Assembly (NCBI GenBank): GCA_950097015.1
Contig: CATNEN010000025.1
Span: forward strand, 3,968,001-4,032,000
DNA: 64,000 bases
Source: Macrostomum hystrix
Lineage: Eukaryota > Animalia > Platyhelminthes
Direction of reading: 5' to 3'
Made by a program: the position numbers and the translations under genes. Numbering within the stretch: the stretch's first letter is position 1; the number at the start of each line of letters is the position of its first letter. Shown here in pieces: positions 29,346 through 47,800 of this stretch. The notes under the pieces were generated by a model. That model searched no databases, was not told the origin of the DNA, and saw only the letters and a list, made by a program, of their open reading frames with translations.

Positions 29346-29948
29346 TCTACTCACCCTCCTATAGGCTTCCTGTTACCTTCCTATCAGCTTTCTGTATATT
29401 TTATAGCCTCAAGATTCTTCGAAATAACAAAGAATAACAAGCTAGTCGTAAAATCTCGATTTCTGACGGCCAAGCTCTTTAAGCGTTTGAAAAGCGCTTA
29501 CATCGGTGCTCCTTTCAATCAGCGACCTTCACCTGCATTTCGACCCACCCAGCGCTCAAAATAGACCTGAGCGAGCCAGACCGGCTGACCTGACGGCCTG
29601 GAAAGCAATGACGCAGAGACCGAGAACCTATGCACCCTATCAGCCTGCGAACTCGTGCCTAGAATGCTCGCGGCTGGTGTGTTGGGTTGGGGAACATGGC
29701 AACGCGGGGCAGAGAGATAACTGCTTGTCTGTTATCTGTTATATCTCTCTCTCGGACCCCCCCCTACTGCTAAACACTGTGCCTTATCGCTTGAATATAA
29801 AATACACTGCTTCGTAGATATGCTCCTGCACTGAAGCTTTGAGATGTGAGTCTCACACTCATAATTGTTGGCCTCTGTGGTCAGTACGAGTTCAAGTCTT
29901 TCGGTTAGTGTCGGCAGAAGGTAGCAGGCAGCAAGAAAACCTGCTATA

Positions 29949-29997
29949 TCTGACCGGGAGTCGAACCCGGGCCACCTGGGTGAAAACCAGGGATCCT
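29949..29997 (-). pseudogene. Truncated tRNA-Glu(TTC) fragment
   Basis: Minus strand aggatccctggttTTCacccaggtggcccgggttcgactcccggtcaga matches the anticodon arm, T arm and 3' stem of tRNA-Glu; the 5' acceptor strand and most of the D arm are absent. Confidence 0.7.
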
Positions 29998-30261
29998 GGT
30001 TTGATTGATTATTGATTATTGATTGTTGATTGAAATTGAAGTTGAAATTGATTATTAAGGAATAACATTTATACGTTATTACAAACCTCGCTTCTGTTTA
30101 ACTAAATTTCAATCGAATTTTAGAAGTCAATAATAAGCAGATAGGCAAAAGCAACAAGTACGCCGGAGAGAAATTAGGAGGATGTTTAGGAAAATAAGTT
30201 GAGAGATGAAGTAAAACGTATTGGAAACTCGCATATTTTGGACACCTTTCCAGCACTTACC

Positions 30262-38369: not shown

Positions 38370-38730
38370 ACAGCACCTGTTCCACGGCTGCCGCACCTGT
38401 TACAGAACCTATTTCACGGGGTACCGCACCAGTCACATGGGATGTCACACCTGTCACATGGGATGTCACACCTGTCACATAGGATGTCACACCTTCACAT
38501 GGGATGTCACACTTGTCACACAGGGTGCCACACCTGTCACACGGGTGCCACACCTGTCACAAGGGTGCCACACCTGTTACAAAACCTGTTACACGGGTTG
38601 CCACACCTGTTACATCACCTGTTACAAAACCTGTTACACGGGGTGCCACACCTGTTACATCACCTGTTACAAAACCTGTTACACGGGGTACCACCCTGTT
38701 ACATCACCTGTTACAAAACCTGCTACACGA
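38370..38730. repeat. Degenerate minisatellite (cacacctgtcaca/cctgttacaaaa units)
   Basis: Direct. Confidence 0.8.
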
Positions 38731-38859
38731 TGTGCCTTATATTCAGTCTGGTTGCAAAGTGCTTGAATGAAACAATGCAGCATAGATTTCTAGCTAAATC
38801 AAACAGCGCATGCATGTTGGCGCCAAAAGGCAGGCTGAGCAACAACCCCACTCCCCGAA

Positions 38860-41800
38860 TCACAGATCAGTGGCCGGCGGGCTGTCCTCGCCAGGATTGA
38901 ATCCGCCAGTCAGCGGCTGTTCAAGCAGCGGCTCCGAGTGCTTGGAGCACCGCCTGGAGCTGCCGGCGCCCGATCGCTGATCCTTCGTGCGCAGCCGCAG
39001 CCGCTTCTTCCAATAGGCTCGGCCGAGCTTCTGCGAGTGCTGCGCGTGGCTGGCGCCTTCAACAACCAGCTTGCGCATCTGCTTCACCTTGCCGCCAGCG
39101 AAGCTGTTCACCTTGGCCAGGAGGGCCCTAGTGGCGTACTCCTGCACCGAGTTCTTGGACACGTGCACAATCTGGGAGTGAGAATAGTACAGCATGAAGT
39201 GGTTCACCAGTATAGGCACGGTGAATGCTATCAGTAGGAGGCCGCTGAGCGCGCACGCGGAACCAACAATGCGACCTGCGTTGTTTTTTTGGTTGAGAGA
39301 ATCTCGTATTGATATCATATTGGAGCGAGATGAAGCTATCGGAGTGCAGCCAGAGAGGCGAGGCCCTGTCTCATCCAAGCGGCAACTCTGTGGCGTCCCG
39401 ATTTTCATGAGAGGGTTTTCTGCTCTTTTGGAGGCTGATTTCCATGCTCCTCCGTCTCCTTCTCTGCCTCTGCCACTTCTCTCTCTCCCCGCCCCTTCTC
39501 TCCCTCCGCCCTTCTCTACCTCTGCCCGCCCCTTCTCTACCTTTGCCCCCTCTCTACCTCTGCCCCCTCTCTCCCTGCCCCTTCCCTCCCTCCGCCCTTC
39601 TCTACCTCTGCCCGCCCCTTCTCTACCTCTGCCCCCTCTCTACCTCTGCCCCCTCTCTACCTGCCCCTTCCCTCCCTCCGCCCTTCTCTACCTCTGCCCG
39701 CCCCTTCTCTACCTTTGCCCCCTCTCTGCTCGCACTGGCGGGACACAGTGCCTGTGAGGTATGAGTCAGACCAGGCCCACGGGCTAAGGTCTGCGATGCC
39801 TCACACCTGCAGTCGCTTTTTGAGCAGGCTTGGCAGGAAGGAGACCTGTGCCTTCGGGTGCAGGAATCCCTCCACGCTGTCCCGTCAGCTGACCCATGGG
39901 TACACGCCCCGCGAGTGTTCAAGGCTGCCCCTAGGGCAGCCGGACAGAATGGGCAACAGCGCTGGATGACCCATCCAGGGCCTCTGGCCAAACTGGGTAC
40001 CTCTAGCCCCGGCTGGAGGGAAAGGTGCCACCCATTGACCTTAACAGGGTATGCGGCCAGTCCGCAGTTTTCGTGCACCTGTGCGTGATCAGGTACCTCT
40101 GGCTACGGCTCTGAGGGAAAGGTGTTACCCTTTGACCTTAACAGGGTATGCGGCCAGTCCGCAGCTTCGTGCACCTGTGCGTGATCAGGTACCTCTGGCT
40201 ACGGCTCTGAGGGAAAGGTGTCACCCTTTGACCTTAACAGGGTATGCGGCCAGTCCGCAGCCTCGTGCACCTGTGCGTGATCAGGTACCTCTGGCTACGG
40301 CTCTGAGGAAATGGTGTTACCCTTTGACCTTAACAGGGTATGCGGCCAGTCCGCAGCTTCGTGCACCTGTGCGTGATCAGGTACCTCTGGCTACGGCTCT
40401 GAGGAAATGGTACTACCCTTTGACCCTAACAGGGTATGCGGCCAGTCCGCAGGCCTCGGTACCGGCCTTTTGGTACCCTCTAATGTCCCCAGTGCATCCG
40501 TGCTGCTGGGCTTTGCCGGACTTCAGTCCGCGCTTTGGTTGGGGAGTATTCCAGCCGCTAACGGTGCCTTTTTGCTGCTCCCGGCTGGCTTGGGGTGTCG
40601 GCCAGTCGGGCTTTTCTCACTCGTTAACGAGCAGCCCCCCACCTGCTTTTCAGCCATGGCCTCGCCCATCTCTTCTTTCGAAACCGAGCTAAACTCGGCC
40701 GCTCCGGACGCTGCCACTGGCAGGTCCCACGTCCTCGGTGCAGCTGGTGGGACTGAGAATCCCGCCACTGAAATCGTCGACCAGAATAAACGCAACCCGA
40801 GCCGCAAGCGCTCGGAGGAAGCGCGTGTAAGGCGCAACCAGAAGCGCAACGAACGCCGCCGTAATGCTGCGGCGGCCGCGACTGGTGGGCGCCCGACACC
40901 TGCACACGAGGCGGGTGCGAAAGATGCGGCAGGGCCACCTGGATCCGCCGCCCCCCCCACCGCCGCTCCGGCCAGCACCATCTCCAAGGCCGGCACCGAC
41001 GCCGACGGAAAGAGCGTGGAAGGCGCAGCAGGGCCATCTGGAGCCGCCGCCCCCACCGCCATCACGGCCACCACCACCCACAAGGCCGGCACGTCCAACG
41101 CCAGCAAGGCCAAGGAGACCTATGCCTCCAAAGCCAAGCGGGAGCCTGTCCAGCCGGCGATCATTGTGGTCGGCGAGGAACAGGACCTCTCAAACGAGCA
41201 GCTCAAAAGCATGCTCAGGACCATCGACGAGGGCCTCACGGACCTGGCACTGGCAGGGACACCAGTCAGCGTTGTCAGGTCCGAAGCGCAGGAGGGGGCT
41301 GTCCTCCTCTGGTGCAAATCGGCGGGGGATAGCCGCCTACTGCGCGATCGGATCAAAGACTTCAAGTGGGGCACCGATGTCGGAAGACTGAGGTGCACCA
41401 CCGAGTCCGAGCGTCCACGGACCCGACGTCATCGTGTCTGGGTCCCCGACGCCTGCTCAATCCGGTCCGGGGACCAACTTCGGCAGCTGCTGCTGAAGAT
41501 GAACCCGGACCTCCCAGCCTCCGGGCTGATCTGCCACGAAACCGTCCGCAAAGAAGCGGAGGGTTTCACGGCGATCTACGGCTTCTCCGAAGCCTGGTCC
41601 AAAAGGATCCCTCACAAGAGCGTAATCAAACCGGGACTCTACCCGCTGACCATCCTGGATTGTCAGGAGAGGAAGGCCGGGGAGGGATCGGAAAATAAGC
41701 GGGCCGCTCCTGGCTCTGGGGCGAAAGCTCCGCCAGCTAAGCGGCATGCAACGTCCGCGGACCCCCGCCCGGGCAAAAATATCCGCATCGCCGAATCCGG

Positions 41801-44800
41801 CCCCCGAGATCGTAGACCAGCCCGCAACAACCGCAAATCGGGCCTGGTCTTGCGGGCGCTCAGCGAAGCCCGAGCGCTCAGAGAGCACCTGGAGCGCTCC
41901 CGCGCTACAAAAGCGCAAACCTCCCTTCCTCCCAGCCAGCCGCAAAGTGCCGGGACCCACGGAGCGGTGGCCACCGACTGGTCTGAGGATCCCCCTCACC
42001 GGAAGGAGGCTGCCATCCACACGGACCCGACCCCCGAGGGCGAGGCGTCGAGTGACGGCAGCGACTGCACCGTTGTTGGGTGGAGCGGCCGGGACACGCA
42101 GCGGTCAGAGCAGCAGCTCTCCGCAGCGATTCCCGCCGTTCCCTCCACAGCGGTTGCGGGCGCGCCGCTACTCATGGAGGTCTGCAGCCCGACCCCGTCT
42201 GAGGAGGACGAGCTGCTCAAGGAGACTCCCGCTGGACCATGATCGGCCACACTGGGATCACCTGCCTGCAGGTTAACCTGCAACACTGCATAGCTGCATC
42301 CGTCAATCTGATGCGCTATGTCGAGCTCAACATGCCGGGTCTCATCCTCGTCCAGGAGCCGTGGACTCATAAAGGTAAGCCTCAAAATGTACCCAATGGG
42401 TATCACTGCCTCTACAACAGCCGTCACTGGGAGAACCAAACTCCCAGGGCGTGCATCCTCGTGAGAGACTCCCTCAACGCCTGGCACAGACCCGACCTTT
42501 CTGATCGGGACACCTGTGTCATCCAGACGGAGAACATCCTCCCAGGAAAAACCGTCTTAATCGCCTCGGTTTACTTACCGGGCGACAGGCCGGCAGTCCC
42601 TGAGGAGCTGATCTCTCTGATTGAAACCTGCGCTGCCAAAAACTATGAGCTCATAGTGGCTGGCGATATTAACGCCCACCACACCCACTGGGGGAGCTCT
42701 GACATTAACTCGAGAGGCGAGGACCTCCTTGCCTACATCTTAACCACGTCCCTGGAGTTCTGCAACACAGGGAGCACCCCGACCTTTGACAATGGCCGGT
42801 GGTCTGAGGTCATCGACGCCACTCTAGCCACACCTGGGCTCTACCAGAGCCTTAGGGAGTGGCAGGTTCTGCCGGAGACCTCCCTCTCCGATCACAAATA
42901 CATCTCTTTCCAACTGGCGGGTGCACGCTGCACTAACCAGATCACTTGGAAAAGGAACGCTAGGAATACCGATTGGGAAGCCTTCAGGCATAACCTCGAA
43001 GGAACCCAACGAAACCTAAGCCCCCCCGCCAACACCTGCGATGAAGCGGATGAGCTAGCTGAGTTTCTCACCAACTCGCTGACCACCGCCTTCGAGGCCT
43101 CCTGCCCCCTCAAAGCTTACAGAGGCAAAACTTCGGCCCCATGGTGGAATCCGCAGCTCGGCGAGCTCCGTCGAACGGCGAAGCGGCTGCACCGCAGGGC
43201 CACGAAGACAAAAAACCCGGCTGATCAGGCTGCGTATCTCGAAGCCATCCATAGCTTCAAGAAGGAAGTCAGAAACGCCAAAAACAGCAAGTGGCGGCAA
43301 TACTGTGAGGAGCTTGAGGGCACTCGCCCCACCTCCAGAATTGTCAAAGCCCTCACGCTGGACAAAATGTCCAAGCTTTCGACGGTGAGGAAGGCCGATG
43401 GCCGACCCACCGAGAACCCTGGGGAAACGCTCGACACTATGCTCACAGCCTTTTTCCCCAGCGTGCCAGCAGGGACAGACCCCCCGGATCACACCGAGGG
43501 AGGTCATATCCTTGCGACGTCCATCATTACTGAAGACCGGGTTACCAAGGCAGCCCAGTCTTTCAAACCTTTCAAATCCCCGGGGCCGGACGGCATTATA
43601 CCAGCCTTCATCCGCGAGGCGGTAAAATGCCATGGCTTCCTCACTAATCTTTGCAAGCTCCTTAAGGCCTGCATTGTGCTTGGGTATGTTCCGAAGGCAT
43701 GGACCGAGGCGAGGGTGGTTTTTATCCCCAAGCCAGGCCGCCCGGACTACCATTCCATTAAATCGTTTCGGCCAATTAGCCTTACCTCCACCATGGTCAA
43801 ACTGATGGAGAGATTGGTGCTCTGGCGCCTCCTCTCTGTGGAGCTGAAAAATATGCCACTAAGCGGCAATCAACACGCCTTTCGGTCGGGACGTTCCACC
43901 GAAAGCGCTCTCCACGCTCTGGTGGACGCTCTGGAAAAGGCCGTCCTCGGGAACGGCTTTGCCCTGAGCATCTTCCTGGATATTGACGGGGCCTTCGACA
44001 ACGTTCTCTTCGAGGCGTTTGACAGGGCCCTACGTATGCGGCACACGCATTCGCATCTTAGGAGGTGGATCATGTACATGGTCCGCCACCGCACTGCTAC
44101 GGCACACCTTCTTGGACACCAGCGGACGGTCACTGTCTGCAAAGGTTGCCCACAAGGCGGCGTCCTCTCACCAGTTCTCTGGAACATGGTTATCGACGAG
44201 CTCTTACGAGACTCTCAGCCAGACCCCATCCTAAAGGTCGGCTATGCGGATGATGTTACGGCAGTGGCATCTGGCCCGGTACCAGAGGCCCTCCGAGACC
44301 TTCTGCAAAACTTTATCAACAACGCCGAAAGATGGGCAACTCGCTGCGGTCTGAAGCTCTCCGAGTCTAAGACAGCGGCGATCATGTTCACCAGCAAAAA
44401 CAAATGGCATATTCGCCCCCTGCAGCTGTATGGAAAGGACATCACCTTCCAGAAGCAAACTAAATGCCTGGGCATAACGCTCGATCACAGGCTCAGCTGG
44501 ACTCCTCATGTCCATGCCAAAGCCAAAAAGGCCTTTGCGATCCTGGCGCAGCTGCGCAGGGCGGTGGGCAACACGTGGGGTCTCACCCCCAAACGCCTAT
44601 GGTGGATCTACACTGCTATGGTCAGGCCGGCTGTCTCGTACGCCGGACTGATCTGGGCTAGTGCCCTTCAGCTTAAGACCTGCCATGAGACTCTTCGGAG
44701 AGTGCAAGGTCGCGCATGTCGGACGATCATGAGCGCCCCGCCATCCGCCCCCTTCGATGGCCTCAACGCCTTCTTGAACATCCTCCCGCTCGATATCTTT

Positions 44801-47800
44801 ATCCGCGGGGAGGCGGCAAAAACCGCCCGGCGTCTCCTTGATGCCGGTGTGCGCTTCGTCCCCCAACGAGCGGCAGCGAAGCGAAAGCTCCTGCCGCACA
44901 CGGACCTTTGCCTGAGAGACTTGGGTGCGAGCAACGGAATCAATGTCCTTACGGACGGTGAACCGTGCTCGCTCAACCTCCTTCAGCGCTTTAAGGTTCT
45001 CATCCCCACCAGGGACCAAGTTAGCGACCACTGGAACACCCAGGAGGTCCACTGCTACACGGACGGATCCATGAAGGATGGCTCCGCTGGCTTCGGGGTC
45101 TGTATCCTTATCAACGGACGTGTTGTCGCCACACACGCCCAACACACTGGAAAATCCTCGAGCGTTTTCCAGAACGAGGTCCTGGCCATCAGCTCCTGCG
45201 CTGCGGAGTTGAATGAGAAAAACATCTCAGGCAGGACTATCATCTTTCACTCGGACAGTCAGGCTGCTCTGCAAGCCCTCTGTCACACCACCACAACCTC
45301 CCGGACAGTCTCCGACTGTGTCCGGCAGCTCAATAACCTGGCCGGTAAGAATACCGTCAGACTTCAGTGGATACCAGGGCACGCCGGTTTCCCTGGTAAC
45401 GAGCTTGCTGACCACCTGGCCAAGCAGGGAGGAGCCAGCTCTGCGCCGGGCCCCTCCCCCCCGGCTCCGATTCCGAGCACCGTCATTTATCGTCAGATTA
45501 ATGATTGGACCGCCAACCTCCATCTTACCCGGTGGAGAAGCACCACTAACTGCCGCCAATCCAAAGCGGCAGTTCCAGTGCCATCCGCTCGGCTCCGGAA
45601 GGTCCTTCTGAACCAGACCCGGAAGGACATCCGGGCCCTCACCATGACCCTCACGGGCCATGGCTGCTACGCCAGACACTGTTTCCTCCGTGGAGACCTC
45701 CGGAGTGAGCTGTGCCCTTTCTGCAACCTTGAGGACGAGGATGCCCTGCACTTCGTCTGCCACTGCCCTTTCTTCACCAGAGAGAGGCTCAATCACCTCG
45801 GACCAAACCCATCAATGGACGATGTTTGCAGATCCGAGAACATCCCGCGGCTCGTCCGGTTCCTAAGGGCTACCAGACGAGCCTCTTTCTTCCCCAGCGA
45901 GGAACAAGCTGCAGGAAGGACCGAACACGGACCTCCCTGACTGGCCCCGCGCCATCGGCCGATTGCGGGTCTTTCAGGGATTAGCGGAATGGGCGACTCC
46001 CGCCTCCCCGCTGCGTCCGTCGGACCGCCCTGCAGATAAGTCAAGTAAGTCAAGCCCCCTCTCTACCTCTGCCCCCTCTCTCCCTGCCCCTTCCCTCCCT
46101 CCGCCCTTCTCTACCTCTGCCCGCCCCTTCTCTACCTCTGCCCCCTCTCTACCTCTGCCCCCTCTCTACCTCTGCCCCTTCTCTACCTCTGCTACTTCTC
46201 TACCTCTGCCCCTTCTCGACCTCTGCTACTTCTCTACCTCTGCCCCTTCTCTACCTCTGCTACTTCTCTACCTCTGCCCCTTCTCTACCTCTGCTACTTC
46301 TCTACCTCTGCCCCCTCTCTCCCTGCCCCTTCCCTCCCTCCGCCCTTCTCTACCTCTGCCCGCCCCTTCTCTACCTCTGCCCCCTCTCTACCTCTGCCCC
46401 CTCTCTACCTCTGCCCCTTCTCTACCTCTGCTACTTCTCTACCTCTGCCCCTTCTCGACCTCTGCTACTTCTCTACCTCTGCCCCTTCTCTACCTCTGCT
46501 ACTTCTCTACCTCTGCCCCTTCTCTACCTCTGCTACTTCTCTACCTCTGCCCCTTCTCTACCTCTGCTACTTCTCTACCTCTGCCCCTTCTCTACCTCTG
46601 CTACTTCTCTACCTCTGCCCCTTCTCTACCTCTGCTACTTCTCTACCTCTGCCACTTCTCTACCTCTGCTACTTCTCTACCTCTGCCCCTTCTCTACCTC
46701 TGCCCCCTCTCTACCTCTGCCCCCTCTCTACCTCTGCCCCTTCTCTACCTCTGCTACTTCTCTACCTCTGCCCCTTCTCTACCTCTGCTACTTCTCTACC
46801 TCTGCCCCTTCTCTACCTCTGCTACTTCTCTACCTCTGCCCCTTCTCTACCTCTGCTACTTCTCTACCTCTGCCCCTTCTCTACCTCTGCCCCCTCTCTA
46901 CCTCTGCCCCCTCTCTACCTCTGCCCCTTCTCTACCTCTGCTACTTCTCTACCTCTGCCCCTTCTCTACCTCTGCTACTTCTCTACCTCTGCCCCTTCTC
47001 TACCTCTGCCCCCATCAGCATTGGTAGTTGGTACCAGCATTAACCAACTCGGATTTGGTTTCTCCCCCCAGTCTACAGATTTCGTTTCATGCACATGTTT
47101 TGCTGCGCAAAAAAATACTGAATCGTGACCACCTAGCATATGCCTGCGTCTGCATCTTAAGAAGCCTCCACCCGTTCGCCACAATGCGCCAGCTATAATC
47201 ATTTGATTCGTGTTTTTCTTCATGTCCTTCGGCTATGCAGCAGGGATTAGAATGGGCAGTGGCGCCTAAAAATAGATTATATGCTTCTAGATCACGGCAT
47301 GCTCCGTGTGGATGCATCGGTAGATAAAACTCTTACGAAATTATAGCAGTTTGAATGGCAAGCCATGATGGAATATTGCTTCTTTGCTATATCAGGAACC
47401 AATCTCTTCATTGATACCCCTAATCTATCGCAGGCCACGCTAAGCCAGCAATCAAGCAATAAACCATTTTTTATTGTACGCAAAGAAGTTGCTTGTCCGA
47501 TACGCAACTATGATAGGAGGTTTTGTGTTGCTATTATTTGCAATTTTAACGAATCGCAGCTTAGTAACAATACTACAGCAAGGATAGGAGACTGTTCTAT
47601 CTTGTGGGCAATGTTAAAAGTGCACGAAATGTGCATATCTGCGGTAATGCAATAAACTGTATTATTATTTGTTTGTTGTGACAATTTGTGGGAAAACCTG
47701 TTTTCGTGGAGAGTTCGTGCATTGTCTCTTCTGTGTTTTTTTGTTTTTTCTTGGGCTTAACAATTGCTTAAATTGTTTTAATTGGAAGCTTTTAATATTT

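What the first reader, a model, noticed from the sequence alone, without database searches (positions are those of the whole stretch)
39728..39960. HDV-like ribozyme with a ~155-nt structured J1/2 insert marks the exact 5' end of an RNase H-bearing LINE
Seen: all five HDV helices can be paired by eye. P1 has a G1.U wobble, L3 UACACGC retains U20/G25, and J4/2 is C-A-G-A. P1.1 is AC/GU rather than the usual CC/GG, a compensatory pair. G1 is the first base after the CT minisatellite. J1/2 (39734-39892) is closed by its own 11-bp helix (ctggcgggaca 39735-45/tgtcccgtcag 39878-88) and contains a C(UUCG)G hairpin and nested stems. Established: HDV-like ribozymes process the 5' ends of R2 and several other non-LTR elements. 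Inference: this element is excised from host or read-through transcripts by self-cleavage, and the large J1/2 domain may act in translation initiation or as a promoter.
Basis: partly seen in the sequence, partly recalled or inferred. Interest (0 to 1): 0.8.

Follow-up and report, generated by a model that had tools for sequence, protein, structure and literature searches.

The report
HDV-like ribozyme heading a flatworm LINE
The first 226 bases of this intact jumping gene (a LINE in a Macrostomum-like flatworm genome) fold as a hepatitis-delta-type self-cutting RNA. Its predicted cut site is the exact first base of every genomic copy checked, so this is a well-supported new example of a known trick rather than a new mechanism.

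Summary
Window 39728-39953 can be drawn as a complete HDV-like double pseudoknot (P1, P1.1, P2, P3, P4, catalytic C39945) with a 159-nt structured J1/2 domain closed by an 11-bp helix.

- **Chance:** my descriptor matches only this site in the 64-kb window on both strands, and 0 of 20000 shuffles when anchored at G39728.
- **5' end:** G39728 is the first base of 42 of 42 genomic copies examined. Seven of them have target-site duplications checked that abut it directly.
- **Covariation:** a relative from another sample (L045, ORF2 61% identical) keeps the fold through changes on both sides of a pair in P1 (2), P1.1 (2) and P2 (2). A second, partial relative (L031) adds double changes in P2 (1) and P4 (2).
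- **Element:** a 6326-bp LINE (39728-46053) with ORF1 and an endonuclease-RT-RNase H ORF2.
- **Correction:** the CT minisatellite is the insertion target, not part of the element.

Self-cleavage itself is inferred, not shown. Structured J1/2 domains and ribozyme-defined LINE 5' ends are already published. The scan had also noted this family on other contigs of the same genome (s1-394531, s1-408102).

New here: a second LINE family in this genome, only 60% identical in ORF2, carries a 94.5% identical 5' ribozyme module.

The parts
39717..39727 (+). left target-site duplication (GCCCCCTCTCT), inside a host 17-nt CT-rich minisatellite (39449-39727)
   Evidence: The same 11 nt recur at 46054-46064. 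Other copies have 10-13 bp duplications abutting G1.
39728..39953 (+). whole HDV-like ribozyme (226 nt); the predicted cut is 5' of G39728
   Evidence: Descriptor match, fold, covariation.
39728..39733 (+). P1 5' strand GCUCGC; pairs with 39911-39916 (GCGAGU), G1.U wobble
   Evidence: L045 has GCCUGC/GCAGGC, with two pairs changed on both sides.
39734..39892 (+). J1/2 peripheral domain (159 nt): closing helix P1.2 39735-45/39878-88; hairpin A 39753-39805; hairpin B 39806-39837; hairpin C 39840-39869 with its UUCG loop at 39853-56
   Evidence: Hairpin A is 85% identical to L045 over 55 nt, with 2 double changes.
39893..39897 (+). P2 5' strand CCCAU; pairs with 39949-39953 (AUGGG)
   Evidence: 100% of cells paired, 2 pairs with double changes.
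39898..39910 (+). P3 (GGG 39898-900 / CCC 39908-10) enclosing L3 UACACGC (39901-07). L3 positions 2-3 form P1.1 with G39917 and U39918
   Evidence: P3 is invariant. U at L3 position 1 and C-G at positions 5-6 are invariant in all three lineages. Both P1.1 pairs are doubly changed in L045.
39911..39918 (+). P1 3' strand (39911-16) and P1.1 3' strand (39917-18)
39923..39941 (+). P4 hairpin, 8 bp (GGCUGCCC / GGGCAGCC), loop CUA
   Evidence: L031 has GGCAGACC/GGUCUGCC (2 double changes). Older subfamilies and family B carry 1-2 mismatches.
39945..39948 (+). J4/2 CAGA; C39945 is the candidate catalytic cytosine (C75 equivalent)
   Evidence: A C four nt before the P2 3' strand is present in the five G000 representative copies, L045 and L031 and unchanged in the 30 aligned family A copies. 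The three bases after it vary (CAGA, CUGC, CGUG).
39954..39995 (+). conserved block just 3' of the ribozyme, including a CUGGAU...AUCCAG hairpin
   Evidence: Nearly identical in L031.
39996..40452 (+). 96-bp tandem monomers (4.8 copies) in the 5' UTR
   Evidence: Copy number varies among copies.
40407..42242 (+). ORF1, 611 aa
   Evidence: (only a weak DUF4780 match).
42239..45940 (+). ORF2, 1233 aa: AP endonuclease, reverse transcriptase, RNase H
   Evidence: (PF03372/PF14529, PF00078, PF00075).
45941..46053 (+). 3' UTR ending in short AAGTCA-like repeats; the element ends at 46053
46054..46064 (+). right target-site duplication, followed by the rest of the host minisatellite (to 47012)

Best explanation
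Window 39728-46053 is an intact, recently active LINE with ORF1 and an APE-RT-RNase H ORF2. It has inserted into a CT-rich minisatellite of a Macrostomum-like flatworm genome.

Its first 226 nt are an HDV-like self-cleaving ribozyme. When the element is transcribed from upstream, by host read-through or by a promoter that starts upstream, the RNA folds into the nested double pseudoknot. C39945 then catalyses scission of the bond 5' of G39728, and the upstream RNA is discarded. The resulting RNA, which begins exactly at G1, is the retrotransposition template. That is why every full-length copy starts at this base, directly next to its target-site duplication.

The 159-nt J1/2 insert is a structured peripheral domain. 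Its closing helix P1.2 holds P1 and P2 together, which is the published 'pinch' role.

Shown here: the fold, its statistical uniqueness, its covariation, the exact 5' ends and the target-site duplications. Inferred: catalysis, co-transcription from upstream, and the role of J1/2.
For: 1. **Descriptor.** All HDV features are met at 39728-39953. The site is unique in the window on both strands, with no hit in 5 shuffled windows and 0 of 20000 anchored shuffles.
2. **Exact 5' end.** 30 family A copies and 12 family B copies with unrelated flanks all begin at GCTCGCAC. Target-site duplications of 10-13 bp abut G1 in 7 copies checked, with no extra bases.
3. **Independent lineage L045** (ORF2 61% identical; Logan ERR14788467). 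The descriptor matches only at contig position 1, and 0 of 20000 shuffles match. Compared with the window, P1 pairs 3 and 4, both P1.1 pairs and P2 pairs 2 and 5 are changed on both sides and still pair.
4. **L031** (JGI contig, ORF1 52% identical). P4 pairs 4 and 6 and P2 pair 5 are doubly changed.
5. **The count of structure pairs on A2.** 88.8% of cells are paired, against 27-54% when partners are slid. Six pairs have double changes, a count that 1 of 500 shuffles reaches.
6. **J1/2 domain.** L045 also has a P1.2-closed three-hairpin J1/2 domain.
7. **Literature.** HDV-like ribozymes define LINE 5' ends; P1 and P1' in R2 are 23 to over 700 nt apart; P4 and most core bases vary (PMC3774820). 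Structured J1/2 (P1.2) domains accelerate cleavage (PMC4908430).
Against: - No cleavage assay or RNA 5'-end data were available.
- No Rfam HDV-type family matched, even at E <= 10.
- The two J4/2 bases that make A-minor contacts in HDV are not conserved (CAGA, CUGC, CGUG).
- The relatives have G1-C instead of the G1.U wobble.
- The identical, hence recently active, family B copies carry an A.G mismatch in P4. An older subfamily has two P4 mismatches.
- A sharp 5' end would also result from an internal promoter that starts transcription at G1.
- The covariation rests on only three lineages, one of them incomplete at its 5' end.
Confidence: 0.8

Rival explanations
1. The sharp 5' end comes from an internal promoter that starts transcription at G39728. 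The conserved pseudoknotted fold then serves as a structural 5' UTR element (protein binding, RNA stability or translation) and does not cleave in vivo, or cleaves only as a back-up for read-through transcripts, as in the L1Tc Pr77/L1TcRz dual system.
For: In L1Tc the same first 77 nt are both an internal promoter and an HDV-like ribozyme (PMC3383444). Hairpin A of J1/2 is 85% identical between lineages whose elements are about 57% identical overall, which suggests a sequence-specific role. Ten upstream ATGs precede ORF1, which argues against simple cap-dependent scanning.
Against: The conserved features are exactly those of the catalytic fold: a C four nt before P2', the L3 bases U...CG, and a covarying P1.1 and P1. 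A promoter acts on DNA and would not need RNA pairs that compensate one another. No extra 5' base of the kind often added opposite a cap is seen at the 7 checked junctions.
Confidence: 0.15
2. The HDV-like drawing is a chance set of pairings within a GC-rich, highly structured 5' UTR.
For: No Rfam hit. The descriptor was partly shaped after seeing the site. GC-rich sequence pairs easily.
Against: 0 of 20000 anchored shuffles matched in each of two lineages, and the match is unique in 128 kb. Eight pairs across P1, P1.1, P2 and P4 changed on both sides in at least one outside lineage (P2 pair 5 in both) and still pair. The slid-partner controls are far lower.
Confidence: 0.04

Closest known systems
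R2 retrotransposon HDV-like ribozymes (Eickbush and co-workers; PMC3774820)
   Same: The ribozyme is encoded at the element's 5' end and sets the RNA 5' end by cleaving a co-transcript. P1 is 6-7 bp and P2 at least 5 bp. P4 is variable. Few bases are invariant. P1 and P1' can be 23 to over 700 nt apart.
   Different: R2 has a single ORF with a restriction-like endonuclease, is specific for the 28S rDNA site, and is co-transcribed with rRNA. This element has two ORFs (APE-RT-RNase H) and is dispersed, with 10-13 bp target-site duplications at unrelated sites.
drz-Agam-2-1 and other large HDV-like ribozymes with a structured J1/2 (P1.2) domain (PMC4908430)
   Same: A stable helix directly joins P1 and P2 and closes a peripheral domain. 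[quoted passage not shown]
   Different: Here the domain is a 159-nt three-hairpin junction, and one of its hairpins is conserved in sequence across lineages. Its effect on the rate has not been measured.
L1Tc/ingi-clade ribozyme L1TcRz within Pr77 (PMC3185411, PMC3383444, PMC4035085)
   Same: An HDV-like ribozyme forms the first bases of a dispersed APE-RT-RNase H LINE. In L1Tc the 5' module is also shared with a non-autonomous partner (NARTc).
   Different: L1TcRz is compact (77 nt), has no large J1/2 domain, and doubles as a DNA promoter. I did not resolve the clade of the flatworm element.
CPEB3 ribozyme (recalled from memory, not tested here)
   Same: L3 has 7 nt. Most copies here read UACACGU, and CPEB3 as I recall it reads UUCACGU. 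Both have a 3-bp GC P3 and a weak P1.1.
   Different: CPEB3 is a compact intronic ribozyme of mammals. Here L3 position 2 is A and forms a Watson-Crick pair in P1.1.

Membership tests
HDV-like self-cleaving ribozymes | Nested double-pseudoknot topology (P1 crossing P2; P3 and P1.1 inside; P4 between P1.1 and J4/2) | tested here: met
   The same topology is present in L045.
HDV-like self-cleaving ribozymes | Cleavage site immediately 5' of a G that opens P1 (G.U or G-C closing pair) | tested here: met
   G39728.U39916. G1 is the first base of 42 of 42 copies, next to their target-site duplications. L045 and L031 have G1-C.
HDV-like self-cleaving ribozymes | Catalytic cytosine in J4/2 | tested here: met
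   C39945, four nt before the P2 3' strand, is present in the five G000 representatives, L045 and L031 and unchanged in the 30 aligned family A copies.
HDV-like self-cleaving ribozymes | L3 with a 5' U and the conserved C-G (the U20 / C24-G25 equivalents) | tested here: met
   UACACGY, UCUCCGU and UUCUCGU. PMC3774820 names a conserved C and a conserved G in L3.
HDV-like self-cleaving ribozymes | Two-base-pair P1.1 between L3 and the bases following the P1 3' strand | tested here: met
   AC/GU in the window and CU/AG in L045, so both pairs are doubly changed. L031 has one pair plus a U.U mismatch.
HDV-like self-cleaving ribozymes | Helices supported by covariation | tested here: met
   Double changes: P1 2, P1.1 2, P2 2, P4 2. 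P3 is invariant. Only three lineages were available.
HDV-like self-cleaving ribozymes | Purines in J4/2 after the catalytic C (A77/A78 of HDV, which make A-minor contacts with P3) | tested here: inconclusive
   The window has CAGA, but L045 has CUGC and L031 has CGUG. The literature reports few invariant positions (PMC3774820).
HDV-like self-cleaving ribozymes | Match to a curated Rfam HDV-type covariance model | tested here: not met
   No hit at E <= 10. This is expected for a 159-nt J1/2 insert and family-specific models, and it is not a defining property.
HDV-like self-cleaving ribozymes | Divalent-ion-dependent self-scission giving a 5'-OH product | not testable with these tools
   Needs a bench assay.
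APE-type non-LTR retrotransposon (LINE) with RNase H | APE, RT and RNase H domains in ORF2; target-site duplications; many dispersed copies | tested here: met
   Pfam; target-site duplications; at least 40 scored matches among 208 candidates. The clade (I, Ingi, Tad or other) was not resolved.

The most novel reading that the evidence does not exclude
The ribozyme-plus-monomer 5' module is a cassette that has recently moved between two autonomous LINE families of this genome. Their proteins are only 60% (ORF2) and 36% (ORF1, local) identical, while the first 438 nt are 94.5% identical. Within that module, the sequence-conserved hairpin A of the J1/2 domain would have a second, sequence-specific job (internal promoter, translation element or ORF-protein binding site) beyond pinching P1 and P2.
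Probability: 0.3. Interest if true: 0.55.

Novelty: new member of a known kind. Interest (0 to 1): 0.3.

Why it matters
It adds a well-supported, probably still active, ribozyme-headed LINE family from a free-living flatworm. I found no paper in the searched library on HDV-like ribozymes in flatworm LINEs.

The family offers natural variants for testing how a large J1/2 domain and an imperfect P4 affect HDV-like catalysis. These variants include G1.U versus G1-C, three different J4/2 sequences, and P4 with 0 to 2 mismatches.

The near-identical 5' module on two LINE families that are 60% identical in ORF2 suggests that ribozyme modules can be swapped between families. The mechanism itself is already established, so a specialist would not be surprised.

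Tried and rejected
- **Rfam.** Scans of the whole window, of 39600-40100 and of 39889-39960 gave no HDV-type hit.
- **Minisatellite as tail.** I first took the 17-nt CT minisatellite for the element's 3' tail, or for an upstream truncated copy. I rejected this because other copies end in AAGTCA-like repeats directly followed by their target-site duplication.
- **Metagenome scan.** A scan for the conserved post-ribozyme block found nothing, not even L031's contig. That collection therefore does not hold these samples.
- **ORF1 word searches.** They gave only two JGI fragments and one chimeric M. lignano model. L032 has no 5' UTR. P0004's contig could not be read.
- **More distant ORF2 relatives** (30-37% identity; L050, L051, L052). 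A relaxed descriptor found nothing upstream of their ORFs. This says little, because their 5' ends are undefined.
- **MAFFT.** One run used wrong-strand references (A1) and was discarded. A whole-element alignment to L045 was uninformative in the 5' UTR because of the tandem monomers.
- **Within-family variation.** It is mostly private decay of dead copies and carries little covariation signal.
- **Not attempted.** No complex prediction or structure prediction was warranted.

Full report
**1. The observation**

All are present:

| Element | Coordinates | Note |
|---|---|---|
| P1 | 39728-33 / 39911-16 | GCUCGC/GCGAGU, G1.U wobble |
| Spacer | A39734 | one base |
| P1.2 | 39735-45 / 39878-88 | 11 bp |
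| P2 | 39893-97 / 39949-53 | |
| P3 | 39898-900 / 39908-10 | GGG/CCC |
| L3 | 39901-07 | UACACGC |
| P1.1 | A39902-U39918, C39903-G39917 | |
| P4 | 39923-30 / 39934-41 | 8 bp |
| J4/2 | 39945-48 | CAGA, C39945 four nt before the P2 3' strand |

The minimum-free-energy fold cannot see pseudoknots. It still recovers P1, the P1.2-closed J1/2 domain with three hairpins (A 39753-805, B 39806-37, C 39840-69 with the UUCG loop), P3 and P4. Its z-score against shuffles is -5.3.

**2. Is it more than chance?**

I wrote a descriptor with these requirements:
- G1 and a 6-bp P1
- a 5-bp P2 and a 3-bp P3
- a 7-8 nt L3 of the form U....G.
- a 2-bp P1.1
- a P4 of at least 5 bp
- C-N-R-A in J4/2

Anchored at G39728 it matches once, and it matches 0 of 20000 dinucleotide shuffles. 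Unanchored, it finds only this site on both strands of the whole window, and nothing in five shuffled windows. Relaxing J4/2 to a bare C, while additionally requiring C at L3 position 5, gave the same result. The descriptor was partly informed by the site itself, so I treat these numbers as supportive rather than exact.

Rfam gives no HDV-type match at any threshold. This is expected for family-specific models and a 159-nt insert.

**3. What the element is**

- ORF2 (42239-45940) has AP-endonuclease, reverse-transcriptase and RNase H domains.
- ORF1 (40407-42242) has only a sub-threshold DUF4780 match.
- A 96-bp monomer array (4.8 copies) fills much of the 5' UTR.

The genome (220 Mb, 42 contigs) holds many copies. 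Thirty loci at 96-100% identity all begin at GCTCGCAC with unrelated upstream DNA.

I fetched the 3' ends of four of them. The element ends in AAGTCA-like repeats, followed at once by a 12-13 bp target-site duplication that also abuts G1. The window copy is therefore 39728-46053. It is flanked by GCCCCCTCTCT at 39717-27 and 46054-64, and it sits inside a host 17-nt minisatellite (39449-39727 and 46054-47012). The minisatellite is the target, not the element's tail.

The best named protein matches are Macrostomum lignano gene-model fragments at 55-76% identity. The host is therefore a Macrostomum-like flatworm.

**4. Relatives and covariation**

Two outside relatives were recovered.

*L045.* An ORF2 word search led to this 6492-nt Logan contig from ERR14788467, with ORF2 61% identical. 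The contig starts exactly at the homologue of G1. My descriptor matches it only at position 1, and 0 of 20000 shuffles match.

*L031.* An ORF1 word search led to this JGI contig, with ORF1 52% identical. The contig begins inside the J1/2 domain, so its P1 5' strand is missing.

Helix by helix:

| Helix | Window | L045 | L031 |
|---|---|---|---|
| P1 | GCUCGC/GCGAGU | GCCUGC/GCAGGC (pairs 3 and 4 changed on both sides; G1.U becomes G1-C) | 3' strand GCGAGC |
| P1.1 | AC/GU | CU/AG (both pairs changed on both sides) | UC/GU (one U.U) |
| P2 | CCCAU/AUGGG | CUCAGA/UCUGAG | CCCAAA/UUUGGG |
| P3 | GGG/CCC | GGG/CCC | GGG/CCC |
| P4 | GGCUGCCC/GGGCAGCC | a longer, unrelated hairpin | GGCAGACC/GGUCUGCC (pairs 4 and 6 doubly changed) |

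On the alignment of the 3' core (A2), the count of structure pairs gave the following:
- 88.8% of cells are paired, against 27-54% when partners are slid.
- Six pairs have double changes, a count that 1 of 500 shuffles reaches.
- P2 and P3 are 100% paired.

Older subfamilies in the genome carry intermediate P4 states with one or two mismatches. This fits the known tolerance of P4 (PMC3774820).

The J1/2 domain of L045 is also closed by a 9-bp P1.2 and holds three hairpins. Hairpin A is 85% identical over 55 nt and has two double changes.

Invariant in all three lineages are the L3 bases U at position 1 and C-G at positions 5-6, the P3 helix, and the C four nt before P2'. The three bases after that C are not conserved (CAGA, CUGC, CGUG). 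This is the main departure from HDV itself.

**5. Mechanism**

The fold, its position and the precise duplication-flanked 5' ends fit the published model. In that model an HDV-like ribozyme trims a co-transcript so that the LINE RNA begins at its own first base (PMC3774820, PMC3185411, PMC4035085). The P1.2 helix fits the 'pinch' role shown for drz-Agam-2-1 (PMC4908430).

Catalysis, transcription from upstream, and any promoter or translation role of J1/2 are inferred, not shown. Ten upstream ATGs precede ORF1. That is compatible with non-scanning initiation but proves nothing.

**6. A further finding: a shared 5' module**

Twelve nearly identical copies (L033-L044) belong to a second autonomous family, family B (6054 bp, both ORFs intact). 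Compared with the window element:

| Region | Identity |
|---|---|
| ORF2 | 60% (amino acids) |
| ORF1 | 36% over 260 aa |
| First 438 nt (ribozyme plus first monomers) | 94.5% (nucleotides) |

L045 lies at the same protein distance (61-62%) yet has a much more diverged ribozyme. The simplest reading is therefore a recent exchange of the 5' module between families within this genome. Family B copies also start at G1, next to 10-13 bp target-site duplications.

**7. Comparison and novelty**

Ribozyme-defined LINE 5' ends and large structured J1/2 domains are both published. The scan itself had already noted this family on other contigs (s1-394531, s1-408102). I found no paper in the searched library on HDV-like ribozymes in flatworm LINEs. 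In Schistosoma mansoni, twister variants fill this role (PMC8501958).

Verdict: a new member of a known kind, with high confidence in the fold and moderate-to-high confidence in in-vivo cleavage.

Noticed in passing
L053:84-6137 (G000:C33:1381383-1387436) and L033-L044: A second autonomous LINE family shares the first 438 nt (ribozyme plus monomers) with the window element at 94.5% identity. Its ORF2 is only 60% identical and its ORF1 36% (local). This points to a recent exchange of the 5' module between families.
   Followed up: partly
window 39449-39727 and 46054-47012: A host 17-nt CT-rich minisatellite (unit GCCCCTTCTCTACCTCT, with an 86-nt higher-order period) is split by the LINE insertion. 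The target-site duplication GCCCCCTCTCT lies within it.
   Followed up: yes
window 39996-40452; G000:C1:16891447-16892374: The 96-bp monomer array in the 5' UTR varies in copy number: 4.8 in the window, about 1.7 in family B and about 9 in one copy on contig 1. This recalls the promoter monomers of mouse L1, yet all copies still begin at G1 upstream of the array.
   Followed up: partly
L045:1 (Logan ERR14788467 contig 472973): The contig begins at exactly the homologue of G1 but runs about 600 nt past the element's 3' end. If the run is RNA-seq, this would be a ribozyme-trimmed read-through transcript. The library type is unknown to me.
   Followed up: no
window 39954-39995: The block directly 3' of the ribozyme (GGGCAAC.GCGCUGGA...CCCAUCCAGGGC, with a 6-bp hairpin) is almost unchanged in L031 despite 52% ORF1 identity. 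Its function is unknown.
   Followed up: no
window 39728-40406: Ten ATG triplets lie in the 5' UTR ahead of the ORF1 start at 40407.
   Followed up: no
window 29946-30018 (-): The only Rfam gathering-level hit in the window is a borderline tRNA (29.5 bits against a 29-bit threshold).
   Followed up: no
window 38427-38736: Two adjacent tandem arrays (21/41-nt and 45-nt units built on CACCTGT(C/T)ACA) lie about 1 kb upstream of the LINE.
   Followed up: no
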